Shown piece after piece: positions 793-58,317 of a DNA stretch of 64,000 bases. The notes under the pieces were generated by a model. The model was not told the DNA's origin and ran no database searches. It saw only the letters and a list, made by a program, of their open reading frames with translations. The position numbers and the translations under genes were made by a program. The stretch spans positions 1 through 64,000 of the IMG/VR virus record IMGVR_UViG_3300020578_000006; one strand, given 5' to 3'. Numbering within the stretch: position 1 is the stretch's first letter; each line of letters opens with the position of its first letter.

Positions 793-1040
793 TTCTTTTT
801 CTTATTCTTCTTCAATGACTCAAGCTTAAATTCATTCTTTACTGCATTCTCAAGAACATGATTAACACCAATGTTACGGTATTGATCTTCCGTAATTACC
901 TCACGGCCGATATCTGCAAATGTTTGTAGCCAGCTATCTGGGCCTTCAATTTGAGCTTCATAATACTTGACAGCTTTAAAAGGACCAACATGAATGGTGT
1001 CGATATCTAGTTTTACATCTAATTTCTTACTTTTACTCAT
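789..1040 (-). CDS. hypothetical protein (start revised to MSKSKKLD)
   Basis: TTGATT..TATAAT promoter with ATG 6 nt after the -10; the longer ORF start lies in structured non-coding sequence. Confidence 0.75.
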   Translation of the reverse strand: MSKSKKLDVKLDIDTIHVGPFKAVKYYEAQIEGPDSWLQTFADIGREVITEDQYRNIGVNHVLENAVKNEFKLESLKKNKKKK

Positions 1041-1073
1041 ATTATTATTATACAGAAACTCAAAATAAATCAA

Positions 1074-1177
1074 GAGCGGAGGAACGATTAGAAACTTAGT
1101 CTCGCTTTCCAAGCTATGTGCTTGGTGCGCTGAGGTCTAACCTATTCAGCCACAGCTATAGTATCTGCCTCCTACTC
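1074..1177 (-). ncRNA. candidate structured RNA (multi-stem junction)
   Basis: GC-rich intergenic stretch; closing helix GAGUAGGAGG/CCUCCGCUC; inner hairpins CCAAGC/GCUUGG, GCUGA/UCAGC, GCAG/CUGU. Confidence 0.45.
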
Positions 1178-1402
1178 TCGAAGTCTTTTATAGTCTAAAT
1201 TCCATAGACTCATTTTGCGTTGAAAATCTCTTTCCTCATAATCTGCTCGAGCTTTGTAATAATTAGTCAACGCATTCTCTCCTTCAATATCTCGAAATGT
1301 ATCTACCCATCCTAAATCTTCTCCCATCCATGTAGAATATTCATACCTACATTTATTAAGTTTTTTGCCTTTGAACTTCTTCTTTTGATACATTTTAGGC
1401 AT
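1172..1402 (-). CDS. hypothetical protein
   Basis: 76 aa ORF in operon. Confidence 0.7.
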   Translation of the reverse strand: MPKMYQKKKFKGKKLNKCRYEYSTWMGEDLGWVDTFRDIEGENALTNYYKARADYEERDFQRKMSLWNLDYKRLRE

Positions 1403-1403
1403 A

Positions 1404-1889
1404 TTAAATAGGAACTCCTAGCTCTAGCAATCTAATAGCCTGCTCGTCTTTCTTCATATGTCTAATTTGAGCATTACTTAAAGGAAATGCTTTATGATAT
1501 TTTAAATTAAAATTCTCATCATTAATTGAAATTATATTTTCTAAGCTATTAACAGATAATCTCTCGCTTTTCATATCTACAACTTGATACACACCAAAGT
1601 ATTCCCCAGGAAGTGCATTAGGAGTACCGATACCTTTATCCCTATCTGATACAATAATACCATAATTAACCTTAATACCCTTAAAATCGTTACGTGTCTT
1701 AAGCTCTTGCTTAGTTAAAGCATCATAAACTTTACGGTATTCTTTAGAATCATAATCAGGAAGTGCTCTAGGTTTATACCAATATTTAAGATGAAATACT
1801 TTACTACAAATTGATTGTGTAGGGGAAATCTGAATATCCATCCAAGCAAACTTCTTGGGGCTAACTAATTTGTAAATGTATGCGCTCAT
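1404..1889 (-). CDS. hypothetical protein
   Basis: 161 aa ORF, ATGA overlap with upstream gene. Confidence 0.75.
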   Translation of the reverse strand: MSAYIYKLVSPKKFAWMDIQISPTQSICSKVFHLKYWYKPRALPDYDSKEYRKVYDALTKQELKTRNDFKGIKVNYGIIVSDRDKGIGTPNALPGEYFGVYQVVDMKSERLSVNSLENIISINDENFNLKYHKAFPLSNAQIRHMKKDEQAIRLLELGVPI

Positions 1890-2098
1890 CTGTTCCTTTC
1901 TAATGCTTTCTCTACCATTTTAACAAAATATAAATAGTCTTCTTTATCTTTTTTCTCTACATACCCGAGTAACTCGTTAATAATATTAGAGAACTCTGCA
2001 CCAATTTGGATATGCTTGTCAAGATTCTTACGAAGTTGGTCATTGCTTTCTCTAAGGTCCTTTAAAGCCTCTTCAAACATTTTCGTTGCTTCAGACAT
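1886..2098 (-). CDS. hypothetical coiled-coil protein
   Basis: 70 aa ORF in operon. Confidence 0.7.
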   Translation of the reverse strand: MSEATKMFEEALKDLRESNDQLRKNLDKHIQIGAEFSNIINELLGYVEKKDKEDYLYFVKMVEKALERNR

Positions 2099-2363
2099 TT
2101 TCTAGCTCCGTTAAACTATAATCTTTAAGAATACTTTCCCTTACAGTTGAGTAAGAAAGAAAAGTCTTAGCATCTTGCTTACTATTGAAGATAAATTGCT
2201 GATCTCGCTTACCGCTAGACAAATCTGTGCCCCCTCCAATATTTCGTCCTCCTAATTTATTAGCAAGAACTTCTAGTTTAGTCTCTTGATCGGAATACTT
2301 GTATTTGTTCTTGATAAAAACAAGTAGACTAACCTGTTGTTTAATTTTCGTAACTTTCATCAT
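2091..2363 (-). CDS. hypothetical protein
   Basis: 90 aa ORF directly behind a sigma70-like promoter. Confidence 0.75.
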   Translation of the reverse strand: MMKVTKIKQQVSLLVFIKNKYKYSDQETKLEVLANKLGGRNIGGGTDLSSGKRDQQFIFNSKQDAKTFLSYSTVRESILKDYSLTELENV

Positions 2364-2369
2364 ATCAAT

Positions 2370-2397
2370 ATTATGAATGAACCTAAGGTTTAGTCAA
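2370..2397 (-). promoter_or_regulatory. sigma70-like early promoter TTGACT-N16-CATAAT
   Basis: Consensus match; ATG 6 nt downstream of the -10. Confidence 0.7.
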
Positions 2398-2599
2398 GAT
2401 AAATTACATCAGCCTTGCAACTTCTTATGTCTAAACCAGTTACCTCTTTAATAGCTTTAGCTATCTTGGTATTTAGATTAAACGGACCAACCGGAATATC
2501 TTTACTCCATTCATAATCATCAAAATTTACAATAACTTCTGAAGGCCCGCTTTTGCTTCCCTCATAAACAATACTATAGATCTTCCAATACTTCTTCAT
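2390..2599 (-). CDS. hypothetical protein
   Basis: 69 aa ORF, ATGA overlap. Confidence 0.65.
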   Translation of the reverse strand: MKKYWKIYSIVYEGSKSGPSEVIVNFDDYEWSKDIPVGPFNLNTKIAKAIKEVTGLDIRSCKADVIYLD

Positions 2600-3291
2600 T
2601 TAAAAATACTTTTTGTTTCTGCTTCTTCTCTCCAGTGTATCTCATTCATGTGAAGAGCTCTATCAATTTCTGAAACTTTCCATGTACAAAAATCTTCGTA
2701 ATCATAGCCAAAAAACCGTACGCTGTTTTTACCTTTAATATTTGTTATTTTATTAACATCTTCATCTCTATCAAGATAGATATCTACGTCAGCAAAATGT
2801 TTTTTTAACACATTACTAAAAACAACAGGACCTGTTAACTCAACAACGCTGCTAGATGTTTGAAGATAAACATTTTCCAATGCTTTTTTAATTACTGCTT
2901 CTAAAATAGGGTGGTTTGCCTCAAACATTAAGCACCACTGAACAAACAAACCAGGATTTTTTTCTCTAGTTACTATTGCCCTATCTGAATCAACAATAAG
3001 TTCTCTTAATGAACGGTTAATAGATGAATCTATATCTAAATATATACCTCCATTTTTGTATAAAAACATATAACGCCATAAATCAGCTCTTGCTACTCTT
3101 AGTTGAAGGGAATCATATATATCAAATACCTGTTTGCTGTAGTTTTCTTTAACAAAAGAATCTATTTCTTCATCATTAAAAATGATATGCTTGTATTCGG
3201 GGTTTAGCTCTTTCATTTTATCGGTAAAAACTTTAGCAGCTAAAGGAAGCTCTTTAGTTTTCCATGTCTGATATATAAATTTGGGGATCAT
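2596..3291 (-). CDS. glycosyltransferase, DXD sugar-binding (GT32/OCH1-like)
   Basis: IPKFIYQTWK N-terminus, RADLWRYMFLYKNGGIYLDID motif. Confidence 0.9.
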   Translation of the reverse strand: MIPKFIYQTWKTKELPLAAKVFTDKMKELNPEYKHIIFNDEEIDSFVKENYSKQVFDIYDSLQLRVARADLWRYMFLYKNGGIYLDIDSSINRSLRELIVDSDRAIVTREKNPGLFVQWCLMFEANHPILEAVIKKALENVYLQTSSSVVELTGPVVFSNVLKKHFADVDIYLDRDEDVNKITNIKGKNSVRFFGYDYEDFCTWKVSEIDRALHMNEIHWREEAETKSIFK

Positions 3292-3313
3292 GTAAATATA
3301 TTACTTAATATGT

Positions 3314-3667
3314 TTAATATCTCAACAAGTAACTTTTTTGTTTTTCTTGACAAAGCTTAGCATTAGATAAAATATAAGAACTAATATTTTGACTGACACG
3401 ACTAATATAAGTAAGAATCAACAGCAATATAATATGAATATAATACTGCCAATGAAGAAGTGTATAGATTGTTTCATTTTTGGTAGGAAGAGAATTTCTT
3501 ATAAAAATGTACATGGTTATAATAGCCTCATATATTTTAGGAAATTTAAAAAATAAGAATTGAAGAGGGTGAAGAACAAATCGTAGGAATGTATATATTA
3601 TATCATAAAAAAATGACACCACAAAGTTTAGATAATTATTAAAGATCAGCTTTAGTTGATGGTTCAT
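3314..3667 (-). CDS. hypothetical membrane protein
   Basis: 117 aa hydrophobic ORF; start uncertain. Confidence 0.45.
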   Translation of the reverse strand: MNHQLKLIFNNYLNFVVSFFYDIIYTFLRFVLHPLQFLFFKFPKIYEAIITMYIFIRNSLPTKNETIYTLLHWQYYIHIILLLILTYISRVSQNISSYILSNAKLCQEKQKSYLLRY

Positions 3668-3914
3668 AATTAATATACCTATAAGGCTCTACTTCTTTTG
3701 TAGAATAAGAAAAGTTTACCCCTGGATAATATTTCATATATTTTGTACAATAGTTAGCAGCCGCACGAATAGCAGCGTGTGGGTTAGATGCTTTAAAAAC
3801 TCTTCTATATGACATTTCTGGTTTTATAGAAAAGCTACAATCTGGGTCATTAACCGTAATTTCAACCTTCCAATGCTGAATAGGCTGTCTACGTACAATA
3901 TTAATTTTTGCCAT
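3639..3914 (-). CDS. hypothetical protein (start likely MAKINIVR)
   Basis: ORF track 3639..3965; internal ATG fits operon packing better. Confidence 0.65.
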   Translation of the reverse strand: MAKINIVRRQPIQHWKVEITVNDPDCSFSIKPEMSYRRVFKASNPHAAIRAAANYCTKYMKYYPGVNFSYSTKEVEPYRYINYEPSTKADL

Positions 3915-4236
3915 ATGAACAATATATAATCTCAGGTCTAACAACACAAGGAACCCAATCGACAAATTTGTTCCCGTAATTATCTAACCAGATTTGAACC
4001 CCTTTAAATACCCTTGCAGGATCCATTTTTAACATATCTACCTCTAAAGCTGCTAATGTTTCTTTTACTTGATAGTCTCTAATTACATCAGCCTGTGTTT
4101 TAATCTTTACAGGAAGATCAAATTGAGTGAGCAATTCTTCAAATGTATTAGGACCAGAGAATATTTTATTTTCTTGATAAGGAACAGACGTCCAGGCTTT
4201 AAGTGTAGTTTTTAAAAAATTGTAAATGCTTTGCAT
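3901..4236 (-). CDS. hypothetical protein (start likely MQSIYNF)
   Basis: ORF track 3901..4311; the upstream part overlaps a separate 43 aa hydrophobic ORF (4212..4343). Confidence 0.6.
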   Translation of the reverse strand: MQSIYNFLKTTLKAWTSVPYQENKIFSGPNTFEELLTQFDLPVKIKTQADVIRDYQVKETLAALEVDMLKMDPARVFKGVQIWLDNYGNKFVDWVPCVVRPEIIYCSYGKN

Positions 4237-4339
4237 AAGATAGAAAATAACACACCCACAACAAAAGCAAAAATAAATAAAGCACCACAAAAGATTATTA
4301 AATCTAGACAAGAATTAAAAGCAGATATAAACCATTGCT

Positions 4340-4513
4340 TCATTCTTCAAAGTTAAAATATAATTGACAAAGTTGAATATTTTCTTTATCTTCTTCTTTT
4401 TCTAAAATAATTGACCGAGCTTCCTCTGGAGATGTGGCGGCAACAGTCTTAAACCCTTTAAATATTCTACCTCTAGAACTTACATTATAAATCTCAAACA
4501 AGTACCGGCTCAT
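4340..4513 (-). CDS. hypothetical protein (57 aa, MSRYLFEIY...)
   Basis: Hand translation; fills the gap between annotated ORFs. Confidence 0.55.
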   Translation of the reverse strand: MSRYLFEIYNVSSRGRIFKGFKTVAATSPEEARSIILEKEEDKENIQLCQLYFNFEE

Positions 4514-4679
4514 CTTTAACCTCCACTTCTACAACATTTAACATGGCGTGTAATTTTTGTTTATTAATTTTAGTTTTAAATCTACTTTCAACATCTTCCA
4601 CAACGCTATCAAATAAACTTTGATTATTGACTAAAGAGGTCAAAATCATATTTAACGTTAATTTCTGATTTTGCTTCAT
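4494..4679 (-). CDS. hypothetical protein
   Basis: 61 aa ORF; TTGCAA-N16-TATACT promoter at 4686..4713 with ATG 6 nt after the -10. Confidence 0.7.
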   Translation of the reverse strand: MKQNQKLTLNMILTSLVNNQSLFDSVVEDVESRFKTKINKQKLHAMLNVVEVEVKDEPVLV

Positions 4680-4703
4680 ATTATGAGTATAAAGGAATGT
4701 AGT

Positions 4704-4946
4704 TTAATTGCAAGGGTTTTCTTCACCACAAGATGTTGACTTATTATTAATATGTTCTGTTAAAAATCTTTCTGCTTCCTCATAAGAATCAAACCTCTTT
4801 AAAACTTCTTTATTCTTTGTCACATTAAAAATTGGTAATCTTCCATCATATTCTTCAATAATTTCATAATTATTCATTAATACCGGTCCTAAGATCTGTA
4901 GAATCAATAATGGCTTGATTAATGATGGTCTGCTCCTTTGCATCAA
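4704..4946 (-). CDS. hypothetical protein
   Basis: 80 aa ORF; true start possibly MNNYEII. Confidence 0.55.
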   Translation of the reverse strand: MMQRSRPSLIKPLLILQILGPVLMNNYEIIEEYDGRLPIFNVTKNKEVLKRFDSYEEAERFLTEHINNKSTSCGEENPCN

Positions 4947-5014
4947 TAACCTCTAAAGCTTTAAGGCGTCCATCTGGAAGACCTATGTTTAGAACCCAAA
5001 TACAAAAGAATATA

Positions 5015-5254
5015 CTAATAGGATCCCACATCTTTTTCTTTTTTCTTAGCTTCAGTATAATCTAAATGCTGTGATGAGTCAATAATAAAATCCAAAAATA
5101 GATCATACAAATTATTAAGCTGTTTATTATTACGAATAATATGTTTGGTTGAATCATCCAATCCGGCTAAATACCGATTAAATAATTCGCTATATCTGGA
5201 TATAAAAAGTCTACTTGAAGTGTTTTTTAATTCTTTTGCTAAATCTGAAGTCAT
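5015..5254 (-). CDS. hypothetical protein
   Basis: 79 aa ORF. Confidence 0.65.
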   Translation of the reverse strand: MTSDLAKELKNTSSRLFISRYSELFNRYLAGLDDSTKHIIRNNKQLNNLYDLFLDFIIDSSQHLDYTEAKKKEKDVGSY

Positions 5255-5343
5255 GATACTTGTTGTATATCTTTAACAAAACCACTAATGGGAGTAATAG
5301 AAATATTGATACTATTATCTCCGCTATCTTCCTCACATATTAT

Positions 5344-5724
5344 TTAGAAATTATAATCGTAGAAATAGGTAGCTTGTTCACCTTTCTGATGAAGGCCGAA
5401 CTTACTATAACGGGTCTGCTGCCCTACTTCACACCAGCGCTGGGCTTTACTTCTCCAGCTTAAGATCTTAATCTTGTTACTAGGGTTACTGGAGAGCTTA
5501 TATTCTTGATCATGATTATCTGCAAAATGCCCAGAGAAGCCGCCTGGATGAAAGTCCTTAGGCTTCTTGATACATTCTGCATCAAGCTCACGAATTTTAA
5601 TACGACGGGGGCTGATAATTTCAATGACTTCCCAAGCATCCCTATCAGTGTAATGAAATTCCGTTACATGTTGACCGACAAATGGTTTCACATCTGGTTT
5701 GTTATCTGTCTTTGTTTTCATCAT
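5344..5724 (-). CDS. hypothetical phage protein
   Basis: 126 aa ORF; TATAAT 6 nt upstream of ATG. Confidence 0.75.
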   Translation of the reverse strand: MMKTKTDNKPDVKPFVGQHVTEFHYTDRDAWEVIEIISPRRIKIRELDAECIKKPKDFHPGGFSGHFADNHDQEYKLSSNPSNKIKILSWRSKAQRWCEVGQQTRYSKFGLHQKGEQATYFYDYNF

Positions 5725-5750
5725 ACCTATATTATAAAAGAAATATTGAA

Positions 5751-6398
5751 TCAGGCAACACTATTTTCTAATTTCTTATCGTTATAAAGGTTTCTATAAT
5801 TCCTAAAACTATCTATCCATTCATCTCTATGGGCAAAAAATATCTGATTTTCACCAGTTTCACAACTAATAAGAATAGTAATATCTTGAATAGGAATACC
5901 TGTTCTATCCTCAAACATATAACTGTAAGCACTAGCTTGCATAAAATAATCCCAAATGTATTCTTTCTTCTTCGGCTTTGAGCTGGTCTTAAAGTCTATA
6001 ATTGATATACATCTATCAAACTCTGCAATACAATCAACCTGTCCGGCTACCTTTAATTCATCTGAATAAAGATGTTGCTCCATACATCTAATGTTCTTAA
6101 TTCTATCTAGGATGGGTTTAAATTGATTAAACATACCACCAACATTGTCTTCTGTATGCTCTTTATTTAGATATGATTCGCAAAGTGTATGGAATTGAGT
6201 ACCTCTTCTAGCTGCAAATTGTTTTATTCTATCCGCCTCTTCATCCCCTACCCGAGCTCTCCACTTAGCTAACTCTTTCTTCTTCCATTCAGATAGTACT
6301 GTTGTAACTGAAGGATATTTGTTTCCCTCAGGAGTAACATAGTGTCTTTCACCAGATTCCTTAGTTACTCTTTGTAACTTAGGCAATTCTATTTTCAT
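5751..6398 (-). CDS. PD-(D/E)XK exonuclease (Cas4/lambda-exo-like, T4-like phage exonuclease)
   Basis: YPSVTTVLS, RGTQFHTLCE, EQHLYS, AGQVDCI, IIDFKTS, QASAY motifs. Confidence 0.9.
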   Translation of the reverse strand: MKIELPKLQRVTKESGERHYVTPEGNKYPSVTTVLSEWKKKELAKWRARVGDEEADRIKQFAARRGTQFHTLCESYLNKEHTEDNVGGMFNQFKPILDRIKNIRCMEQHLYSDELKVAGQVDCIAEFDRCISIIDFKTSSKPKKKEYIWDYFMQASAYSYMFEDRTGIPIQDITILISCETGENQIFFAHRDEWIDSFRNYRNLYNDKKLENSVA

Positions 6399-6404
6399 GC
6401 CTAT

Positions 6405-6432
6405 ATTATGAATGGATTTGGAAGAATGTCAA
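6405..6432 (-). promoter_or_regulatory. sigma70-like promoter TTGACA-N16-CATAAT
   Basis: Consensus match; ATG 6 nt downstream. Confidence 0.75.
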
Positions 6433-6836: not shown

Positions 6837-7163
6837 CTAGTTTTTTTTATTTTTTTTTAACCAATCATAACCTATTGATGCTCCAGTTTTTAGAGATTCA
6901 ACTTCCGGACTATTTTTGCCTTCCAGTAACATATATTCTGCACTTAAGGACTTTCGTATCGATATAAGCTCATCTCCCTTTATTCCTTTAAGCATTGTAA
7001 TATATCCGCCGGGCCATTTACCATAAAGCTCCTCTAAAGATTCACAGCTAGGTTCACTCCAAACTTCTATAAATTCATTGTAATATCCTGTTGATTCTAA
7101 ATATTTTTCAGTAGGAGTTTTTGCCCACTTAGACCACGATAATTCATTTTGTGAGTTGAACAT
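6837..7163 (-). CDS. hypothetical protein
   Basis: 108 aa ORF; TAAATA upstream of ATG. Confidence 0.7.
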   Translation of the reverse strand: MFNSQNELSWSKWAKTPTEKYLESTGYYNEFIEVWSEPSCESLEELYGKWPGGYITMLKGIKGDELISIRKSLSAEYMLLEGKNSPEVESLKTGASIGYDWLKKNKKN

Positions 7164-7194
7164 AATATATTTAAATTAATAATATCTAAATCAA

Positions 7195-7267
7195 TAGCGA
7201 GTATGGGATTCGAACCCATGTATCGGGAATGAAAGTCCCGAGTCCTAGACCCCTAGACGAACTCGCC
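7195..7267 (-). tRNA. trnE: tRNA-Glu(UUC)
   Basis: Cloverleaf; anticodon stem CGGGA/UCCCG, loop CUUUCAU; GGUUCGAAUCC T-arm. Confidence 0.92.
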
Positions 7268-7271
7268 GTAT

Positions 7272-7347
7272 TGGTGGGCGTACAAGGATTTGAACCTTGG
7301 ACCAAGGCATTATGAGTGCCCTGCTCTGACCGCTGAGCTATACGCCC
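7272..7347 (-). tRNA. tRNA with CAU anticodon (Ile2 or elongator Met), encoded CCA
   Basis: GGGCGUA acceptor; loop CUCAUAA; 3' ACCA. Confidence 0.9.
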
Positions 7348-7352
7348 ATCTT

Positions 7353-7425
7353 TGGCTCAGGAGGGACTTGAACCCACACTTGAGCGATTTTAAGTCGCTT
7401 GCCTCTGCCGTTGGGCTACTAAGCC
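7353..7425 (-). tRNA. trnL: tRNA-Leu(UAA) with short variable loop
   Basis: AGCGA-CUUAAAA-UCGCU anticodon arm; only 5-nt variable region; U.U mismatch in T-stem. Confidence 0.85.
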
Positions 7426-7469
7426 AACTTGAAATAATAGTATATTGGAATTTAGAATTTAGGCAACTT

Positions 7470-7841
7470 TTAAAAGAATCGTTTTGCTGCCCCGGGCATC
7501 TGGCCGGCCCGTCTCATATGTTCGATATCTTTTTCAGCTAAAATTAATGCTTCAAGAAAAGCTTTTAAAACACCGAACCGCTCGTACATTCTTTTGTAAA
7601 CGAATTCAGGTTCGTTTTGTTTTATTCTTTTAGCCAAATCCTCAAACTTACCTGCTAAATTTTCTTTGATTTGGGCAAGAGTAAAAATACCAACACCCTG
7701 AACCATTACGTGGGAATTTTCTATATTCTCTTTATCCCATTTTGCTATAACTTTAATCTTACTCTTAGGTGCTGGAAGCCCTTGAGTGTTCTTTATAACA
7801 TCTTCATATTGTTCAAAGATTGTATGTGTATCTTTGTTCAT
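7470..7841 (-). CDS. late protein with MNKDTHTIFEQY N-terminal motif (putative internal head protein)
   Basis: TAAATA 5 nt upstream; N-terminus shared with 8086, 17031 and 17430 ORFs. Confidence 0.7.
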   Translation of the reverse strand: MNKDTHTIFEQYEDVIKNTQGLPAPKSKIKVIAKWDKENIENSHVMVQGVGIFTLAQIKENLAGKFEDLAKRIKQNEPEFVYKRMYERFGVLKAFLEALILAEKDIEHMRRAGQMPGAAKRFF

Positions 7842-7849
7842 ATTATTAT

Positions 7850-8089
7850 TTAGTTACTATGAATATACATATCTGTCCTTATTGCATATTCTTTATAATC
7901 AGCATAGTAAAATCCTCTATCCCCCCCATCTAGTATAATTGTTGGTCTATTCTTTATAAAAAAACACCATTGATCGGTAAACTCTTTACCGTGAAAATTT
8001 AATACATCTTCCTGTAAAACATAATCAGATGTTGTTTCAACTCCACCAATTCCTTTATAGTTTAATGTTCTTTTAGGACAAAATTTCAC
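7850..8089 (-). CDS. hypothetical protein
   Basis: 79 aa ORF, GTGA overlap. Confidence 0.7.
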   Translation of the reverse strand: MKFCPKRTLNYKGIGGVETTSDYVLQEDVLNFHGKEFTDQWCFFIKNRPTIILDGGDRGFYYADYKEYAIRTDMYIHSN

Positions 8090-8949
8090 GAGTTTTTAAC
8101 ACAATTATTAACTCTTTTTCCACCCTTAATTTTAGTTCCTTGTTTATGATATCCCTTCCAACATTTAGGGTCTAATCGTCTCTCTTCACTTTCAGCTGAA
8201 GCACGTCTTTGTTCATTATCTGCATCTTTTTTATTCTTTAATTCATTTTTTACGCTAAGAAGATGATTGATATCAATCTTATCTTCAGGCTTTGATGCCC
8301 ATGTCTGATTGTACATTTCGGCAAATTTCTTTAAAACCCAATCTTCATAAAAAGGAGAATGTGTCTCAAAAAACTTTATATAAGGGTCGGAACCTTCTCG
8401 TTTATATTCACTTCTAAAAAACTTGCCCAATATACTCATCCATCTTGATTCATTTTCTTTTCTTCTCTTCACATCACCTGGACTCTCTTCACCTTCGCCT
8501 TTTAACTCCATTTCATGTGCATAGTCTTGTGCAGAATATTCCTCTTTACTATCAGGCATTTGTTCTCTAAATTCATCTTCAACATCAGGGAATCCATGCT
8601 CTTGGTACCAACCATATTGAGACACCACATCCATAGGAAAGTCTTCATCATACATAAATAGATTCATAGCGCGTTTTTCTGGATTTTTATCGTGTTTAAA
8701 GATCCTCTTTACAACTTCATCAAACGCCAATTCCAGCACTTTCCTTTGACCTTCTTTTGTATTTGTATCAATATCTCTAGGAAGAAAAGCGGCTGCTATC
8801 TCGTGAGTATATTTTAATTTCTCTTTTGGCTTATCTTCAGGAAGCTTGGAGGCTGCATGTTTTGAAAGCTTTGCAAATTCTGGATATGGCATACTTTCGG
8901 TTACTACGGTTTTATATGCTTCAAATATAAGATGACTGTCTTTATTCAT
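8086..8949 (-). CDS. late acidic protein with MNKDSHLIFEAY motif and C-terminal CWKGY...NCVK module (putative internal head protein)
   Basis: Late promoter 5 nt upstream; small C-terminal module recalled from T4-like aquatic phages. Confidence 0.75.
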   Translation of the reverse strand: MNKDSHLIFEAYKTVVTESMPYPEFAKLSKHAASKLPEDKPKEKLKYTHEIAAAFLPRDIDTNTKEGQRKVLELAFDEVVKRIFKHDKNPEKRAMNLFMYDEDFPMDVVSQYGWYQEHGFPDVEDEFREQMPDSKEEYSAQDYAHEMELKGEGEESPGDVKRRKENESRWMSILGKFFRSEYKREGSDPYIKFFETHSPFYEDWVLKKFAEMYNQTWASKPEDKIDINHLLSVKNELKNKKDADNEQRRASAESEERRLDPKCWKGYHKQGTKIKGGKRVNNCVKNS

Positions 8950-8963
8950 CTTATTATTTAGTC

Positions 8964-9783: not shown

Positions 9784-9977
9784 TAATATTTTGCTCCCCA
9801 AATTTTTATTCTAGCATTAGGATCGTTGCTTCCATCAGGAGTGTCAAGCATATTATATTTGTTATAATCCCAATCTATACTGTCTTCGGCCATGTTATTC
9901 CTAGTATATGGTCCTTGTTTAACGCTAGTACAAGAACACAAAACAATTCCTGCTAGTAGTAACAATATTAAATTCAT
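9783..9977 (-). CDS. small putative lipoprotein
   Basis: Signal-like LILLLLAGIVLCSC; TTGACA-N16-TATAAT promoter (9984..10011) with ATG 6 nt after the -10. Confidence 0.65.
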   Translation of the reverse strand: MNLILLLLAGIVLCSCTSVKQGPYTRNNMAEDSIDWDYNKYNMLDTPDGSNDPNARIKIWGAKY

Positions 9978-10012
9978 ACTATTATTATAAAGGTTATTAA
10001 AGTTATGTCAAG

Positions 10013-14327: not shown

Positions 14328-14333
14328 AAGATT

Positions 14334-14405: not shown

Positions 14406-14436
14406 ATATATATATTAATATATATTAAATAATACA

Positions 14437-15590: not shown

Positions 15591-15635
15591 ATTGATTATG
15601 TTATAATATTAATAATAAAAAGCAATAAATAATTA

Positions 15636-42175: not shown

Positions 42176-42194
42176 AGAACAATTATAATATGTA

Positions 42195-45492: not shown

Positions 45493-45571
45493 TTATAGAG
45501 TATAAAAGAAAATATATGTAAAATCAAATTATTTATATTGATTTTTTTAGAATACCTCTTATTATATGGAT

Positions 45572-46563: not shown

Positions 46564-46591
46564 TATTTCTTTTTTTTGTTTATAATTAGTT

Positions 46592-47750: not shown

Positions 47751-47773
47751 TTTTCTAGACATAAATATGGTAT

Positions 47774-48517
47774 ATGGCCGTAGCAACAATTTCTGTTAAT
47801 TTCGCAACTTTATCTGACGCACGCGCTGGTACTAGTACAGTAACAAGTATCAATCCCAAGCAGTTAAAAGATTTATTTAATAGCGCCAATAACATGTACG
47901 ATATTAGCGTTAAGAGCATTACAACAAACGGTAACGTTACAATTAATGGCACGGTAAATGCCTCTGCAGGATATGCAGGTAATTTTGTTGCTTCTGGAAC
48001 AATATCAGGCACAGGCTGGGCTGGTAATCTTGGAGTTACCGGTAATATTTCTGCTACTCAAGGGTGGAACGGTAATTTAACGGTCACAGGTAGTATTTTT
48101 GCTTCTAACGGATATGCTGGTACCCTCTCGGTAACAGGTAATATTCAAGCCACCCAAGATATCATTGCATATTATTCTGATAAAAGATTAAAAAACATTA
48201 GCGGTAATATTTCTGGTGCTCTAGAAAAAGTAAACAAGCTAAACGGCATATATTATACTAATAATGATGTGGCAAACTCTTTTGGCTATAATGATACAGA
48301 AAACAAAGTCGGTTTAATAGCTCAAGAGGTGAAAGAAGTTTTACCAGAATCCGTAAAACTAGCTCCGTTTGATTCAGACGGAAATAGTAAGAGTATTTCC
48401 GGTCAAAATTATTTAACTGTTCAGTATGATAAGATTGTTCCTTTACTTGTTGAAGCAATAAAAGAGCTTACAGCAAAAGTTAAAGATTTAGAAGCATCTA
48501 AGACGTTGGAGAAGTAA
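47774..48517 (+). CDS. tail fibre with C-terminal intramolecular chaperone (peptidase S74-like)
   Basis: G.L.VTG.I.A repeats; SDKRLKNI...GLIAQEVKEVLPE...V.YDKIVPLLVEAIKEL; late promoter. Confidence 0.88.
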   Translation: MAVATISVNFATLSDARAGTSTVTSINPKQLKDLFNSANNMYDISVKSITTNGNVTINGTVNASAGYAGNFVASGTISGTGWAGNLGVTGNISATQGWNGNLTVTGSIFASNGYAGTLSVTGNIQATQDIIAYYSDKRLKNISGNISGALEKVNKLNGIYYTNNDVANSFGYNDTENKVGLIAQEVKEVLPESVKLAPFDSDGNSKSISGQNYLTVQYDKIVPLLVEAIKELTAKVKDLEASKTLEK

Positions 48518-54772: not shown

Positions 54773-56150
54773 AAAAATCTTCCGGTAGCTTCTTACAAAA
54801 GCCTACTTTTTCATAAATTTCTTTACCCGCCGTATCCACGTCCACAAAAGGAAATTGCCGCTCTAACATATATTGTCTTTGAGGCTCTTTAAAATTATTG
54901 TATTTTGATTTATCTAGCCAAAGCGTTTCCTGCCATAACTTTTTATCGAGATAGGGATATCTTACCTCTATACCATGGACTCCACAGCAATACTCACAAG
55001 AATAAGGATTATTATCATCATAATCTATAACACCATTAATATCCTTAAGCCTTTTAAATAGCTTATTAATACCCTTAAAGCCAATGGCATCTCCACCTAA
55101 GCCGGATAAACAAATCTTATATCCTTCTTTTTTTGCTTTTAAAAAAATAAGACCGGCCCCTATAAACCCATAAGTCTCTCTACATACATATCCTACAAAT
55201 TTATTTTTATAAAAATCAAAGTGAGTATAGGCATAGTCCTCGACATTTTTAAAAATTTCATCTCGAGTAATCTCATGCATACTATCTGTAGGGTCGATAA
55301 GCTCTTTATTGACAATATTAGGTATTAAAATCTGTTTTCCTTCTATGATAGGTGGATTTTTAGTACTCAATCCATGGCGCCATAATAAAACATTAGACGG
55401 CTTTTCTAATACATTGACGGAATAAGCTTTAAAAGGAAGGTTATACTTTAACAGGGCGCTGCAAATAGCTCCGCTATCATACCCCTCACTAACACCCATA
55501 AAAATTTTTTTAGAAGCAGCAACAGTTCTTTTCAATATACTTTCATCAAACGCCATTTTCCAATCATCTAAATTAACTTTGTGTTCATTATCTAAATCAA
55601 AAGCTGTTATTTTATTTAATTTTATATTATCATTGCTTATATCGTATGTGTAATAATAATTTCCATATACGTGAAAAATTTCTTTATACCCTAATACAGA
55701 CAGTGCGCTCTTATATGAAGCTATACCTATTGTATTATTATGAATACTAAAAAATATAGGCTTAGTACCGAAAGTGTCAGAGCCAAAAATTAATTTCTTT
55801 TTTTTCTTATCTAACAAAACGATAGTAAATTCACCATCAAGATATTTAAAAAATTCTGCTCCATACTCTTCATATGCTTTGATTATACTTTCTCCATCTG
55901 ATAGACTATCAGGGGTAATGTCTTTATAATTATATATTTCACCATTGAAAACCATTATGATGTCACCACATTTAGAAATAAGTGGTTGAGGGGTCAAGTC
56001 TCCGGTAATACTTAGTAAATTATGTATAAAGTGAAAGCCGCTTTCGTTTTTATAAGAAGTTAAATCTGGTCCTCTAAATTTTTGATAGAAATTGGCGGCA
56101 TTTAAAACTTCTTCGGATGTATCTTTATTTGTGACCAAAAAACTACACAT
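54762..56150 (-). CDS. asparagine synthetase (glutamine-hydrolysing)-like amidotransferase
   Basis: N-terminal Cys2, RGPD, FNGEIYN, degenerate PP-loop SEGYDS, SGLGGD, EVRYPYLD; TATAAATA 4 nt upstream. Confidence 0.88.
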   Translation of the reverse strand: MCSFLVTNKDTSEEVLNAANFYQKFRGPDLTSYKNESGFHFIHNLLSITGDLTPQPLISKCGDIIMVFNGEIYNYKDITPDSLSDGESIIKAYEEYGAEFFKYLDGEFTIVLLDKKKKKLIFGSDTFGTKPIFFSIHNNTIGIASYKSALSVLGYKEIFHVYGNYYYTYDISNDNIKLNKITAFDLDNEHKVNLDDWKMAFDESILKRTVAASKKIFMGVSEGYDSGAICSALLKYNLPFKAYSVNVLEKPSNVLLWRHGLSTKNPPIIEGKQILIPNIVNKELIDPTDSMHEITRDEIFKNVEDYAYTHFDFYKNKFVGYVCRETYGFIGAGLIFLKAKKEGYKICLSGLGGDAIGFKGINKLFKRLKDINGVIDYDDNNPYSCEYCCGVHGIEVRYPYLDKKLWQETLWLDKSKYNNFKEPQRQYMLERQFPFVDVDTAGKEIYEKVGFCKKLPEDFFKV

Positions 56151-56200
56151 AAAATATTTATACAGTAGTATAAAAAATAAAAACTACAGGTAAATAAAGC

Positions 56201-57355
56201 ATGCTTGATAAAAATTTATGTATTTTGCCATGGATTTCGCTTTATATAAGAGCGGACGGCAATATTTATCCCTGTGAAAGTGTAGCCTGGCAAGGAGACG
56301 ACTACTTACTTGGTAATCTAAACACAACAACACTAGAGGAAGCTTGGAACCACGATATGATGAAGAAGCTTCGGCTTAAAGTTATTACCAATTCTACATG
56401 CGAACTGTCTAATGAAGAGAAAAATTCTTGCATGTACCTTATAAATCATTCTCTTTATGAAGACGTATATAAAAATTACAAAAACGAAACAAAGTCAGAC
56501 GGAAGTTATAAAGTTGATATAAAAGCATTATTTTTAGAAAGATCCAATCTTTGTAATCTTCAATGTTTATATTGTTGTGATGTTAGTAGCTCTAGCTGGG
56601 AGCGAAAAAATAAAACCAATATAATGAAAATTAGTGATACTGTTTATGATTTAAAAGTGCTACCTATAACAAACAATCTTAGAGAATTATTTTTATCTGG
56701 CGGTGAACCGGTTATTAACAAATACAATAAAAAACTCTTACAACATTTAATTAACCATAATCCAAATATAGAATTAGGAATGGCAACGAATTTAACTTAT
56801 AATTTTGAACTATATGAAGAGTTTTTTAGTTTATTAGAAAAATTTAATAATACTAAAGTTTTTTGTAGTGTAGACAGCTCAGAAACTCGACACGATTTTA
56901 TTAGAATCAACTCAAATTGGAATACCGTAAAAACCAATTTAAATAAACTTAAAAACTATAAAGTAAGAATATATTTTAATAGTGTTATATCTTTATTAAG
57001 TGCTTTCTACTTAAAAGAATTTCACGAAACTTTAATTAATATGAAGATAATAGGCATTGACGGTATTCGATATATTAATTTGACTGGTCCAGAAGAACTT
57101 TGTATACAGTCGCTTTCGTTTAATAAGAAAAAAGAACTTAAAGAGTATCTTATTAGCTACATTAATTTTTTAAAAGAAAATGAAAATTTATCTAATAATA
57201 TAGATTTATATCCAAACAATAACAAGCCTTCTCAGGCTGCAGACAATATAATAAAATTTTTATTTAAAAAACTAGGTAATAATAATTATATAGACAATTT
57301 GTCTAAATTTGTATCTATAGATACTATTAAAAAACACTTTGACAGATTACTCTAA
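56201..57355 (+). CDS. radical SAM protein with N-terminal SPASM/twitch-like domain
   Basis: CILPW...GNIYPC; CNLQCLYC; GGEP; late promoter. Confidence 0.9.
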   Translation: MLDKNLCILPWISLYIRADGNIYPCESVAWQGDDYLLGNLNTTTLEEAWNHDMMKKLRLKVITNSTCELSNEEKNSCMYLINHSLYEDVYKNYKNETKSDGSYKVDIKALFLERSNLCNLQCLYCCDVSSSSWERKNKTNIMKISDTVYDLKVLPITNNLRELFLSGGEPVINKYNKKLLQHLINHNPNIELGMATNLTYNFELYEEFFSLLEKFNNTKVFCSVDSSETRHDFIRINSNWNTVKTNLNKLKNYKVRIYFNSVISLLSAFYLKEFHETLINMKIIGIDGIRYINLTGPEELCIQSLSFNKKKELKEYLISYINFLKENENLSNNIDLYPNNNKPSQAADNIIKFLFKKLGNNNYIDNLSKFVSIDTIKKHFDRLL

Positions 57356-57592
57356 AATATCGCCATAATTTTTGGAATAAGAAAAAATACTTCCAAAAAA
57401 CTTTTTTTGATTAAAATTATAATAGGCTATAAATTCTTTATCTTCAGTGGTGTAATTAATTGCAAAGATATTTTTACCTAGAACACTTTTGTAGAAATTG
57501 CCGCTAATTTTTTGTTTTGTGCTTATTTGTTCGGCTAAAAAAGTACCATTATCATTTAAATTTATTATCTCATCTCTTGTCTTAAATACCAT
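57347..57592 (-). CDS. hypothetical protein
   Basis: 81 aa ORF. Confidence 0.5.
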   Translation of the reverse strand: MVFKTRDEIINLNDNGTFLAEQISTKQKISGNFYKSVLGKNIFAINYTTEDKEFIAYYNFNQKKFFGSIFSYSKNYGDILE

Positions 57593-57648
57593 AAACGTAT
57601 TTAGATGTATATCATTGATTACAACTAGGTTTATATTATAATTAATTT

Positions 57649-58317
57649 ATGGTCAAAACTATGGTTATAGTTCCTCATGGAGATGATGAAATATTAGGCT
57701 TTTATGGGGCTATAAAAAGAAATTTAGAGCAGAACAATCATGTTAGTGTTGCGTTTATTATGGGGCCTAAGAACCTAACTAACGAAAGGAACACTCATCA
57801 ATTTCACACTATAGAAAAAGTTAAAGATAAGTTAGGTTATAACGAGGTGTTTTATCTAGATATTTTTAACGAACACAATATTCATTCAAATAAGCTCGAG
57901 CTCATCACAAGAATAGAAGAACTTGTATCTAATAATCATATAGATATCGTTTACACCACCCACTGGGGTGACAACCATCAAACACATAAATTATGCTATG
58001 AAGCGGTTGTTGCAGCCATAAGACCTATAGGGCCATGTAAAGCATCGAGACTAATTACAGGGGAGATTATATCCTCTACAGATCAAGCCCCGCAAACAGA
58101 AGCACATAGCTTTATCCCTAATATATTTTTGGAATTGTCCGAACAAGAAATAGAGGAAAAGATTAATCTTTTGAAAATGTATGAATATGAATATATGCAA
58201 ACCCCTCACCCTAGATCTGAGTGGGGGCTAAAAGCGGTAGCTAGCTTTAGAGGTATACAAGCAGGTGTTAAATACGCTGAAGGATATTTTTGTGCAAGAG
58301 AAATCATTAAAAAATAA
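57649..58317 (+). CDS. PIG-L/LmbE family N-acetyl-sugar deacetylase
   Basis: PHGDDEILG, DNHQTH, KINLLKMY..E...PHPRS...LA.FRG...G..YAE.F. Confidence 0.9.
   Translation: MVKTMVIVPHGDDEILGFYGAIKRNLEQNNHVSVAFIMGPKNLTNERNTHQFHTIEKVKDKLGYNEVFYLDIFNEHNIHSNKLELITRIEELVSNNHIDIVYTTHWGDNHQTHKLCYEAVVAAIRPIGPCKASRLITGEIISSTDQAPQTEAHSFIPNIFLELSEQEIEEKINLLKMYEYEYMQTPHPRSEWGLKAVASFRGIQAGVKYAEGYFCAREIIKK

What the first reader, a model, noticed from the sequence alone, without database searches (positions are those of the whole stretch)
1040..57655. Window-wide promoter geometry implies leaderless mRNAs
Seen: early -10 boxes sit 6 nt before the ATG of genes starting at 1040, 2363, 4679, 5724, 6398, 9977, 20254, 20817, 22916, 42175 and 57649 (7 nt at 20169). 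Late TAAATA/TATAAATA boxes sit 4-6 nt before the starts at 7841, 8949, 14437, 15636, 16317, 16850, 17426, 18284, 18524, 20488, 21977, 22224, 30907, 30940, 32713, 36323, 37820, 39282, 39520, 47774, 56150 and 56201. SD motifs are essentially absent. Known: sigma70 starts ~6-7 nt after the -10, and T4 late starts ~6 nt after TATAAATA. Inference: transcripts begin at or next to the AUG. Together with bS21 and a phage tRNA-fMet, this suggests a phage programme built on leaderless translation initiation.
Basis: partly seen in the sequence, partly recalled or inferred. Interest (0 to 1): 0.72.

Follow-up and report, generated by a model that had tools for sequence, protein, structure and literature searches.

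The report
Promoters fused to start codons
In this 230-kb freshwater T4-like phage about a third of all genes have an early or late promoter box placed so that transcription should begin on the first letter of the ATG or GTG start codon, so many of its messages probably lack a leader and a ribosome-binding site; no RNA data could be found to prove it.

Summary
The geometry is real. All 34 coordinates check out. Genome-wide (229,717 bp; the window is its first 64 kb), 113 of 322 genes have a promoter box at this spacing. For 46 it is a sigma70-type box, TTGAyw-N15-17-TATAAT, mostly 6 nt before the start. For 67 it is the T4-type late box, TAAATA, 4-6 nt before the start (Poisson p 1e-23 to 1e-44).

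New points:
- About 20 late genes start with GTG at this spacing. TTG starts are not enriched there.
- The phage encodes a gp55-type late sigma factor.
- The spacing persists in relatives down to about 60% portal identity, while the intervening bases, and ATG versus GTG, change.
- In distant relatives one gene instead has the box, a short leader, a Shine-Dalgarno (SD) motif and then the start.

"SD essentially absent" is overstated. SD cores occur at 22% of genes that lack an adjacent promoter, including the major capsid and sheath genes, and at 3% of promoter-adjacent genes.

Pelagibacter phages HTVC008M and Mosig, which also carry bS21, show the same late spacing. T4, Aeh1 and two cyanophages do not.

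The initiator-like tRNA shows no such association, and the bS21 link stays speculative. No RNA run covered the phage, so start sites are inferred. Thermus phages are a known precedent.

The parts
9975..10011 (-). Early module for gene 9783-9977: TTGACA, 16 nt, TATAAT, 6 nt, ATG. A perfect 12/12 sigma70 consensus.
6396..6432 (-). Early module for the PD-(D/E)XK exonuclease gene 5751-6398: TTGACA, 16 nt, CATAAT, 6 nt, ATG.
1038..5758 (-). Four more early modules, at 1038-1073, 2361-2397, 4677-4713 and 5722-5758. In each the -10 hexamer ends 6 nt before the ATG.
7161..8960 (-). Three late modules (TAAATA, then 4-5 nt, then ATG) at 7161-7173, 7839-7852 and 8947-8960.
13612..13624 (-). Late module, gap 4, for gene 12880-13614 (pilin-like N-terminus).
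14333..14406 (-). Initiator-like tRNA with CAU anticodon. It is 88% identical to E. coli initiator tRNA genes and keeps A11:U24, but has U1.G72 and only two of the three G:C pairs in the anticodon stem.
14426..16319 (+). Three late modules at 14426-14439, 15626-15638 (peptidase/endolysin-like gene) and 16307-16319.
16848..18294 (-). Three late modules at 16848-16861, 17424-17436 and 18282-18294. The last opens a 284-codon frame with GTG, whose first in-frame ATG is 121 codons in.
18469..18526 (.). Divergent pair 52 nt apart: TATAAT-N6-ATG on the minus strand (18469-18483) and TAAATA-N5-ATG on the plus strand (18513-18526).
20167..20256 (.). Two back-to-back early promoters fill the 84-nt gap between the divergent starts at 20169 (minus strand, gap 7, helicase-like ATPase) and 20254 (plus strand, gap 6).
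20478..22918 (+). Five modules on the plus strand: late at 20478-20490, early at 20782-20819, late at 21966-21979 and 22213-22226, and TATAAT-N6-ATG without a recognisable -35 at 22904-22918.
29564..29578 (-). Late module, gap 6, for the 1170-aa gene 26054-29566.
30905..30942 (.). Divergent late pair. The 32 nt between the two ATGs (30907 minus strand, 30940 plus strand) hold two opposed TAAATA boxes and nothing else.
32703..32715 (+). Late module, gap 4, for gene 32713-32985.
36321..37831 (-). Late modules at 36321-36335 (gap 6) and 37818-37831 (gap 5, tail fibre gene). Both are kept at gap 4-7 in 11 and 13 distinct relatives.
39280..39294 (-). Late module, gap 6, for the gp15-like tail sheath stabiliser gene 38455-39282. 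In relatives it switches between ATG and GTG, or becomes box, leader, SD, start.
39317..39530 (-). bS21 gene (67 aa) with its own late module, gap 4.
42173..42209 (-). Early module for the DUF366 gene 41585-42175: TGGACT, 16 nt, TATAAT, 6 nt, ATG. A -10 box lies 6 nt from the start in 14 of 24 distinct relatives and 7-9 nt in 9 more, although the spacer bases differ.
42627..42654 (+). Portal gene start with TAAATA 11 nt upstream, which implies a leader of about 5-6 nt and no SD. Relatives have gaps of 4, 5, 6, 8, 9, 10 or 11.
45490..45527 (-). Early module TTGATT, 17 nt, TATACT, 6 nt, ATG. In 10 relatives the start codon is GTG, 6-8 nt after the -10 hexamer.
46560..46594 (+). Early module ending in a GTG start for a second exonuclease gene, 46592-47335. 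The family match begins at residue 9 of the GTG-started protein.
47762..47776 (+). Late module, gap 6, for tail fibre gene 47774-48517. The gap is 6 in 8 of 8 distinct relatives.
56148..56203 (.). Divergent late pair, 50 nt between the ATGs at 56150 (minus strand) and 56201 (plus strand). Both have gap 4.
57590..57651 (.). Late module, gap 5 (57590-57603, minus strand), beside an early module, gap 6 (57615-57651, plus strand, PIG-L deacetylase gene).
4514..4533 (-). Contrast case: the internal gene starting at 4513 overlaps its upstream neighbour and has a GGAGG core 6 nt before the ATG. Thirteen other window genes are similar, for example 24998, 30224 and 48519.

Best explanation
The window is the first 64 kb of a complete 229.7-kb genome of a distant T4-like myovirus from lake water.

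The first gene of most transcription units is fused to its promoter. Early units use a host sigma70-type promoter: TTGAyw, then 15-17 nt (mostly 16), then TATAAT. Late units use a T4-type late promoter, (A/T)(A/C)TAAATA, read by the phage's own gp55-like sigma factor. In both classes the box sits where the known start-site rule puts +1 on the A or G of the ATG or GTG start codon, or within about two bases of it. The mRNA would therefore begin with its start codon, have no room for a Shine-Dalgarno site, and have to be translated by the leaderless route, in which the ribosome with initiator tRNA recognises the 5'-terminal start codon.

Genes further down each unit start by overlap or close coupling with the gene before, and about a fifth of them have an SD. 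A few late genes, including capsid and sheath, use ordinary leadered SD messages.

Shown here: the geometry, its statistics, its conservation, the late sigma gene, and the split in SD use between the gene classes. Inferred: the actual 5' ends and the mode of translation.
For: 1. Sharp spacing peaks, independent of gene calls.

2. The modal gaps equal the known distance from box to +1. For sigma70 the gap is 6. For TAAATA the gap is 5, because the T4 box occupies -13 to -6.

3. A gp55 homologue is present: phrog_234 'late sigma transcription factor', E 1.8e-24, and a T4 gp55 tblastn match at E 8e-8.

4. Where a function is known, late-box genes are late genes: tail fibres, gp15-like stabiliser, protease, terminase-like, tube. 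Early-box genes are exonucleases, a helicase-like ATPase and small ORFs.

5. Of 78 genes that open a divergent unit, 40 have the geometry. Divergent starts lie only 29-50 nt apart.

6. SD-like cores occur at 0 of 46 early and 3 of 67 late promoter-adjacent genes, against 47 of 209 others (Fisher p 5e-7).

7. GTG is enriched at the late spacing (21 cases against 0.75 expected), including reading frames of 2179, 1019 and 893 codons. TTG is not enriched (3 against 2.8). This fits a purine-initiating start site.

8. T at -1 is enriched: 67% in late-box genes against 44% in genes without an adjacent promoter.

9. Relatives with 60-93% portal identity keep the spacing while the spacer bases and ATG/GTG change. 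In four distant relatives the gp15-like gene instead has box, short leader, GGAGG or AAGGAG, then start.

10. Controls: T4, Aeh1, P-TIM68 and S-CAM9 show no such peak. T4 and Aeh1 show a hump at 23-29 nt, as expected for leadered messages.

11. Experimental precedent: in Thermus phages YS40 and Lalka27a most transcripts begin with the A or G of the initiator codon.
Against: - No 5' end was observed. The RNA runs found with the capsid gene gave no coverage of the stretch laid. Metagenome contig ends were uninformative.
- The late gap varies from 4 to 6. In the gap-6 class the fifth base after the box is a purine in 14 of 15 genes, so some messages may carry a 1-2 nt leader.
- Some orthologues and some genes, such as the portal gene at 42652, have gaps of 8-11 nt, which implies leaders of about 3-6 nt.
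- The host is unknown, so its ability to translate leaderless messages, above all GUG-initiated ones, is untested. E. coli handles these poorly (my knowledge).
- The first 40 nt of these genes are not less structured than those of other genes.
Confidence: 0.8

Rival explanations
1. The boxes are real promoters, but most messages carry a very short leader of about 1-9 nt rather than starting exactly on the start codon. Translation would still be SD-independent, but not strictly by recognition of a 5'-terminal start codon.
For: - The late gap ranges over 4-6 nt.
- In gap-6 genes a purine sits two bases before the ATG in 14 of 15 cases.
- Orthologues and the portal gene have gaps of 7-11 nt.
- Several genome-wide cases have gaps of 8-12 nt and no SD.
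Against: - The early class is very tight: gap 6 in 36 of 46 genes.
- The modal late gap of 5 puts +1 on the A by the T4 rule.
- With gap 4 (25 genes) a start site any further downstream would destroy the codon.
- Many studies count a 5' UTR under 10 nt as leaderless anyway.
Confidence: 0.12
2. The AT-rich boxes next to start codons act mainly in translation, for example as unstructured A/U-rich ribosome landing sites bound by protein S1. The genes would be transcribed from more distant promoters as parts of long polycistronic RNAs.
For: - A/U-rich upstream tracts can enhance initiation (my knowledge).
- 11 of the 52 late-box genes of the first gene set lie within 10 nt of the upstream gene's end.
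- No RNA data exclude read-through.
Against: - A -35 box at a fixed 15-17 nt from the hexamer has no role in translation.
- The late box equals the T4 gp55 motif, and the phage encodes gp55.
- Divergent pairs need promoters within 29-50 nt.
- The same box sits upstream of a leader plus SD at the sheath gene, and at the gp15-like gene of relatives.
- TTG starts are excluded at this spacing.
Confidence: 0.06
3. The pattern is a by-product of AT-rich composition and of how starts were chosen.
For: Loose sigma70-like sites are as common in shuffled sequence as in the real one: 79 against 82.6.
Against: - Tests that do not depend on gene calls give p of 1e-23 to 1e-44.
- No shuffle reached the observed TAAATA count.
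- Four T4-like genomes, two of them of like G+C content (T4 and P-TIM68; Aeh1 and S-CAM9 are richer), lack the peak.
- The independent GenBank annotation of HTVC008M places CDS starts exactly 5 nt after TAAATA.
Confidence: 0.01

Closest known systems
Thermus phages phiYS40 and Lalka27a (experimentally mapped transcripts)
   Same: A large lytic phage in which most transcripts start with the A or G of the initiator codon. Promoters without a leader occur in more than one temporal class (bioRxiv 10.64898/2026.04.20.719267).
   Different: - Unrelated phages of a Deinococcus-Thermus host, in which leaderless expression is also the host's habit (PMC12340547).
- Different promoter motifs.
- There the 5' ends were measured; here they are only inferred.
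T4 late transcription (gp55 sigma, TATAAATA at -13 to -6)
   Same: The same box, a gp55 homologue, and the box in front of orthologues of T4 late genes.
   Different: In T4 and Aeh1 the start codon lies mostly 23-29 nt after the box, with an SD in between. Here it mostly lies 4-6 nt after it. gp33 and gp45 partners were not identified.
Pelagibacter myophages HTVC008M and Mosig
   Same: T4-like, low G+C, encode bS21, and show TAAATA exactly 5 nt before 12 and 7 gene starts respectively. These include annotated late genes such as head closure, DNA end protector and tube cap.
   Different: - Only about 30% protein identity to this phage, in about 26 shared genes.
- No early TATAAT-N6 peak, no GTG class and far fewer cases.
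- A published attempt to predict their late promoters was reported as unsuccessful (PMC7029224).
Leaderless genes predicted from a -10 box next to the ORF (Deinococcus-Thermus, Actinobacteria, mycobacteria)
   Same: TAnnnT a fixed short distance before an ATG or GTG start and no SD. The -10 motif adjacent to ORFs is described as a common expression pattern (PMC12340547, PMC3160421, PMC4633059).
   Different: Those are cellular genomes using the housekeeping sigma factor. Here a phage also applies the layout to a phage-specific late sigma factor.
Lambda cI mRNA from the PRM promoter
   Same: A phage message that starts with its AUG. It is translated by 70S ribosomes with initiator tRNA (PMC10491246).
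   Different: It is a single regulatory gene in a phage that otherwise uses SD sites. In E. coli its translation improves when uS2 and bS21 are missing.
bS21-encoding freshwater phages of Bacteroidetes (Chen et al. 2022, PMC9723584)
   Same: Lake phages that carry bS21 among late structural genes. bS21 was proposed to favour phage messages late in infection.
   Different: Those phages are assigned to hosts that ignore SD sites, and that paper does not analyse promoters. This phage has canonical sigma70 early promoters and uses SD sites at some genes.

Membership tests
Leaderless mRNA expression (promoter adjacent to ORF) | A -10-type promoter element ends about 5-8 nt before the start codon | tested here: met
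   113 of 322 genes genome-wide and 39 of 108 in the window.
Leaderless mRNA expression (promoter adjacent to ORF) | The primary 5' end maps to the start codon | tested here: inconclusive
   RNA runs were found, but the stretch laid had no coverage. Contig-end and metagenome checks were empty.
Leaderless mRNA expression (promoter adjacent to ORF) | These genes have no SD, while other genes of the same genome do | tested here: met
   3 of 113 against 47 of 209, Fisher p 5e-7.
Leaderless mRNA expression (promoter adjacent to ORF) | The 5'-terminal codon is AUG, or GUG in some lineages | tested here: met
   92 ATG, 21 GTG and 0 TTG in the gene set (ATG and GTG only were tried there). TTG is not enriched in the gene-call-independent scan either.
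Leaderless mRNA expression (promoter adjacent to ORF) | Protein is made from the leaderless message | not testable with these tools
   Needs reporter assays, toeprinting or ribosome profiling.
T4-type late transcription | gp55-family late sigma factor | tested here: met
   G000 164060-164677 (minus strand): phrog_234, E 1.8e-24; tblastn with T4 gp55, E 8e-8.
T4-type late transcription | TATAAATA-like box in front of late genes | tested here: met
   Consensus (A/T)(A/C)TAAATA from 67 genes. Those with a known function are structural.
T4-type late transcription | gp33 co-activator and gp45 sliding clamp | tested here: inconclusive
   T4 gp45 gave no tblastn hit at E 0.01, although gp44 did. gp33 was not searched for.
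Ribosomal protein bS21 (PF01165) | Match above the curated Pfam threshold and to solved bS21 chains | tested here: met
   28.2 bits against a cut-off of 27. The best PDB matches are bS21 chains, E 4e-4. The protein is divergent, with an N-terminal extension of about 8 residues.
Ribosomal protein bS21 (PF01165) | Is incorporated into host 30S subunits | not testable with these tools
   Host unknown; no structure or proteomics.
Bacterial initiator tRNA (tRNA-fMet) | CAU anticodon, A11:U24, overall likeness to known initiators | tested here: met
   88% identity to the four-copy E. coli initiator-type gene. A11 is conserved in the alignment.
Bacterial initiator tRNA (tRNA-fMet) | Three consecutive G:C pairs in the anticodon stem | tested here: not met
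   Two G:C pairs plus U29:A41. The same arm occurs in tRNA genes of Patescibacteria, Bdellovibrionales and Opitutaceae.
Bacterial initiator tRNA (tRNA-fMet) | Unpaired 1:72 (C1 x A72) | tested here: not met
   U1.G72 wobble instead. A weak pair may still allow formylation (my knowledge), so I call it initiator-like and not a proven tRNA-fMet.

The most novel reading that the evidence does not exclude
Fusing promoters to start codons and carrying bS21 may be two halves of one late-translation strategy. It would be shared by this freshwater lineage and by the marine pelagimyophages, which are among the most abundant phages known. In this reading the phage bS21 replaces the host protein on the 30S platform and changes how the anti-SD tail and the mRNA exit channel are held. 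Messages that begin with AUG, or even GUG, would then be preferred late in infection. That would give phage-encoded bS21 a function and explain why T4-style late-promoter searches failed in pelagimyophages.
Probability: 0.15. Interest if true: 0.85.

Novelty: new variant of a known kind. Interest (0 to 1): 0.62.

Why it matters
Leaderless expression as a genome-wide phage strategy has been shown only for Thermus phages. Here the same layout appears in the T4 superfamily and is applied to the gp55 late sigma system, whose model member T4 uses leadered, SD-bearing messages.

If the 5' ends are confirmed, four things follow:
- Gene callers and promoter predictors that expect a leader will mis-place starts in such phages. 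About 20 GTG starts here were missed by a first-ATG rule.
- Late promoters of pelagimyophages, reported as not predictable, can be read directly.
- The unknown host must translate 5'-terminal AUG and GUG messages efficiently.
- The unexplained presence of bS21 in aquatic phages becomes testable in a cultured system, HTVC008M or Mosig on Pelagibacter HTCC1062.

Tried and rejected
- Direct RNA evidence. Two run searches found lake DNA runs and 24 metatranscriptomes holding 11-39% of capsid-gene words. The single read-laying run, on G000 134500-140499 (sheath region, six predicted promoters) with four RNA runs, returned three short diverged pieces. In hindsight the capsid words probably came from relatives.
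- Contig ends of 30 related IMG/VR contigs and a metagenome scan with the first 32 nt of the protease gene (which found only the source contig) gave no RNA-like ends. The look-up of encoding contigs on bS21 showed only long DNA contigs.
- Host. The bS21 homologue search found only phage relatives. bS21 against the phage collection found nothing. The exact anticodon arm of the initiator-like tRNA occurs in Patescibacteria, Bdellovibrionales and Opitutaceae, which is not a coherent host signal. Bacteroidetes seem unlikely because the early promoters are canonical TTGACA/TATAAT (my knowledge of Bacteroidetes promoters).
- Other translation genes. No peptide deformylase and no IF3 domain.
- tRNA-fMet as a correlate. 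It is absent from HTVC008M, Mosig and Melnitz, and an initiator-like tRNA is present in Aeh1, which lacks the geometry. Rejected.
- Lower 5' structure in leaderless genes: no difference.
- Enrichment of A at +4, proposed as a recognition signal for lambda cI: 70% early, 43% late and 57% other genes, so no consistent signal.
- Megablast of 12 kb against phage records: no match.

Full report
WHAT THE WINDOW IS

The 64-kb window is the first part of a single 229,717-bp virus contig that CheckV rates as complete. It is held at 0.97-1.00 of sampled words by 20 lake-water DNA runs. G+C is 28-40% along the window.

The phage is a distant member of the T4 superfamily:
- The portal protein is 27-32% identical, and the major capsid protein at most 34% identical, to T4-like phages and cyanomyoviruses.
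- Only about 31 genes give tblastn hits to T4, HTVC008M or P-TIM68.
- There is no nucleotide match in the phage collection.

I built my own set of 322 genes from long open frames and a codon-usage score. I then refined the starts.

CHECK OF THE OBSERVATION

I printed the 60 nt upstream of every coordinate in the finding.

- All 12 'early' starts have a TAnnnT hexamer ending 6 nt before the ATG (7 nt at 20169). Eleven of them have a TTGAnn or TGGACT box 15-17 nt further up. The gene at 22916 has no -35.
- All 22 'late' starts have TAAATA ending 4, 5 or 6 nt before the start codon. At 18284 that codon is GTG.

- Late boxes at 7163, 13614, 29566 and 57592.
- Early boxes at 24568 and 45492, and at 46592 with a GTG start.
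- TATAAT-N6-ATG at 18471.

By my criteria 39 of 108 window genes qualify, 26 late and 13 early. Those criteria exclude 42175 and 22916, which nevertheless have TATAAT at gap 6.

IS IT MORE THAN CHANCE?

Anchored on gene starts, exact TATAAT ends 6 nt upstream of 24 genes and at most 3 genes at any other gap from 0 to 39. TAAATA is found at gaps 4, 5 and 6 in 14, 23 and 15 genes, against about one per gap elsewhere.

To avoid circularity I also scanned every motif occurrence on both strands. For each gap I asked whether a start codon at that gap opens at least 40 codons.

| Motif and start codon | Gaps | Observed | Expected | p |
|---|---|---|---|---|
| TAAATA then ATG | 4-6 | 53 | 3.3 | 3e-44 |
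| TAAATA then GTG | 4-5 | 21 | 0.75 | 2e-23 |
| TATAAT then ATG | 6 | 25 | 1.3 | 1e-23 |
| TAAATA then TTG | 4-6 | 3 | 2.8 | not significant |

In the window alone, the raw pattern TAAATA-N4-6-RTG occurs 33 times against 13.4 +/- 3.8 in dinucleotide shuffles. A loose sigma70 scan finds as many sites as in shuffles, 79 against 82.6. The signal therefore lies in where the best sites sit, not in how many there are. The finding's own refutation test, a distance distribution matching random AT-rich background, is clearly not met.

SHINE-DALGARNO SITES

The statement that SD motifs are essentially absent needs correcting.

- There is no overall G enrichment upstream of starts.
- Among genes without an adjacent promoter, 47 of 209 (22.5%) have a GGAG, GAGG or AGGA core. 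The spacing peaks at 6-8 nt. The rate is 6-8% at random positions and internal ATGs.
- Among promoter-adjacent genes the count is 0 of 46 early and 3 of 67 late (Fisher p 5e-7).
- The major capsid gene (G000 99167, minus strand) has AAAGGAGA upstream and no nearby box.
- The sheath gene (137900, minus strand) has TAAATA 45 nt upstream followed by GGAGG.

The ribosomes that translate this phage therefore do read SD sites. SD is missing exactly where the promoter leaves no room for it. In 112 of the 208 genes without an adjacent promoter for which an upstream neighbour could be scored, the gene lies within 10 nt of, or overlaps, a co-directional upstream gene.

WHY THE BOXES ARE PROMOTERS

1. 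The early class has a -35 box at a fixed 15-17 nt, mostly 16. Such a box has no role in translation.

2. The late consensus, (A/T)(A/C)TAAATA, is the T4 late motif. The phage encodes a gp55-type late sigma factor at G000 164060-164677.

3. Where functions are recognisable, the two classes separate as early and late genes should.
   - Late-box genes: tail fibres, the gp15-like sheath stabiliser, the prohead protease, a terminase-like gene, the tube gene and bS21.
   - Early-box genes: two PD-(D/E)XK exonucleases, a DnaB/KaiC-like ATPase and runs of small ORFs at both genome ends.

4. Of 78 genes that open a divergent unit, 40 have the geometry. Several divergent pairs leave only enough room for two opposed boxes:
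   - 32 nt at 30907/30940
   - 50 nt at 56150/56201
   - 84 nt at 20169/20254
   - 29 nt at G000 140306/140336

WHY +1 SHOULD FALL ON THE START CODON

The sigma70 -10 hexamer occupies -12 to -7 (established knowledge). A 6-nt gap therefore puts +1 on the A. The T4 late box TATAAATA occupies -13 to -6 (PMC1524935). TAAATA followed by 5 nt, the modal gap for ATG, does the same.

Several details fit a start-site window of about three positions with a preference for purines:
- The base before the codon is T in 67% of late-box genes, against 44% of genes without an adjacent promoter. This is the usual pyrimidine-purine start context.
- ATG and GTG occur at this spacing, but TTG does not.
- In the gap-6 class the fifth base after the box is a purine in 14 of 15 cases. 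Those messages may carry a two-base leader.

GTG STARTS

Twenty-one reading frames begin with GTG 4-5 nt after TAAATA. They include frames of 2179, 1019, 893, 389 and 289 codons. In these the first in-frame ATG lies 619, 808, 132, 163 and 217 codons downstream, so the GTG start is hard to avoid.

In the window this applies to 18284 and to the small frames at 5336 and 46357. The GTG at 46592 follows an early promoter instead, and a family match beginning at residue 9 supports it.

RELATIVES

A portal-based search found 44 related IMG/VR loci at 51-100% identity.

- The spacing peaks persist in the 83-88% and 71-79% groups and are weaker at 51-68%.
- The tail-fibre gene keeps gap 4-6 in 12 of 14 distinct upstream sequences.
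- Gene 47774 keeps gap 6 in 8 of 8.
- Gene 36323 keeps gap 4-7 in 11 of 11.
- The DUF366 gene keeps a -10 box at gap 6 in 14 of 24 and at 7-9 in 9 more, while the six spacer bases differ freely.
- Gene 45492 has ATG here and GTG in relatives, mostly at the same 6-nt distance from TATACT.
- The gp15-like gene alternates between ATG and GTG. In four distant relatives (L028, L032, L033, L042) it has the box, a few bases, GGAGG or AAGGAG, 6-8 nt and then the start.

The last case is a natural experiment. Where a leader exists it carries an SD directly after the box. Where there is none the codon sits at the predicted +1.

The portal gene shows that the layout is not absolute. Its gap is 11 here and 4, 5, 6, 8, 9 or 10 in relatives.

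CONTROL GENOMES

I applied the same scan to seven complete T4-like genomes.

- T4, Aeh1, P-TIM68 and S-CAM9 show no peak at 4-6 nt. T4 and Aeh1 show the expected hump at 23-29 nt.
- HTVC008M has 12 genes with TAAATA exactly 5 nt before the ATG. The deposited annotation independently starts CDSs at those positions, including the genes for the head closure protein, DNA end protector, tube cap and tape measure.
- Mosig has 7 such genes.
- Melnitz has 3, which is near background.

The three pelagimyophage-type genomes and this phage carry bS21. The four others do not. This is suggestive, but it amounts to about two independent lineages. A published comparison of pelagimyophages reported that late-promoter prediction 'was unsuccessful' and singled out S21 as their main translation-related difference from cyanomyophages (PMC7029224).

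bS21 AND THE tRNA

The 67-aa protein passes the Pfam threshold narrowly (28.2 against 27 bits). Its best solved relatives are bS21 chains. Its gene has its own late box at gap 4.

The mechanistic link is open. In E. coli the ribosomes that lack uS2 and bS21 translate the leaderless lambda cI message better (PMC10491246). The phage's most abundant late proteins also use SD sites.

The tRNA at 14333-14406 is clearly initiator-derived. It is 88% identical to the E. coli initiator genes and keeps A11:U24. However, it has U1.G72 and only two of the three G:C pairs. The second CAU tRNA (7272-7347) has G1:C72 and is not an initiator.

Initiator-like tRNAs do not track the geometry in the control genomes. 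No deformylase or IF3 domain is encoded.

WHAT COULD NOT BE DONE

No 5' end was seen. The host remains unknown.

COMPARISON WITH WHAT IS KNOWN

A phage programme of mostly leaderless transcripts, with the A or G of the initiator codon at the 5' end, has been shown for Thermus phages YS40 and Lalka27a. A -10 box next to the ORF is a described expression mode in Deinococcus-Thermus and other bacteria (PMC12340547, PMC3160421). By contrast, phiKZ has no leaderless transcripts and AR9 has leaders of 26-491 nt.

My literature searches found no report of this layout in T4-like phages or pelagiphages.

I therefore rate it a new variant of a known kind. It works like the Thermus phage case. It sits in a different phage lineage, it involves the gp55 late system, and it has a GTG class.

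Noticed in passing
L028, L032, L033, L042 (orthologues of window 38455-39282): In four distant relatives the codon aligned to Met1 of the gp15-like protein is ATT. It is preceded by a strong SD (GGAGG or AAGGAG) at 6-8 nt. These may be ATT start codons.
   Followed up: no
window 23640-23732 (+): ARAGORN calls a tRNA-Ile with anticodon TAT that is 93 nt long. That is unusually long for this tRNA class, so it may have an insertion or be a mis-call.
   Followed up: no
window 52000-64000: A low-G+C (28-32%) cluster of sugar-modifying and radical SAM genes: family 2 glycosyltransferase, galactosyltransferase, AsnB-like amidotransferase, two radical SAM proteins (one with a SPASM domain), PIG-L deacetylase and a DXD glycosyltransferase. 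Several of them have early or late boxes at leaderless spacing.
   Followed up: partly
window 40665-40701 (-) and about 25 relatives: A third conserved motif lies before gene 40209-40664: TTGATT, 17 nt, TAAGTG, then 5-7 nt to the ATG. It may be a separate (middle?) promoter class at the same close spacing.
   Followed up: partly
HTVC008M (NC_020484) 6280, 7562, 11972, 16007, 18916, 18943, 19456 and others; Mosig: Cultured Pelagibacter myophages show TAAATA exactly 5 nt before annotated late-gene starts, including a divergent pair only 26 nt apart. My searches found no report of this.
   Followed up: partly
G000 97516-97700 and 99168-99241 (outside the window): The major capsid gene is followed by a strong hairpin-plus-T-run terminator. 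It is preceded by a 74-nt spacer with small hairpins and an AAAGGAGA SD but no late box. It is probably expressed from the protease-gene promoter at 100989, perhaps after RNA processing.
   Followed up: no
G000 196600-197400 (outside the window): Three small frames start with TTG after a nearly identical element of about 20 nt that ends in GATGTATAA. This is a local repeat of unknown meaning, lying opposite a 2179-codon gene.
   Followed up: no
window 5751-6398 (-) and 46592-47335 (+): Two paralogous PD-(D/E)XK exonuclease genes (phrog_298). Both follow early-type promoters, one with an ATG start and one with a GTG start.
   Followed up: partly
window 12586-12601 and 54016: The divergent gene pairs 12585/12602 and 54015/54017 are only 16 nt and 1 nt apart and have no recognisable box at the usual spacing. 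Their promoters must lie inside the neighbouring coding sequences.
   Followed up: no
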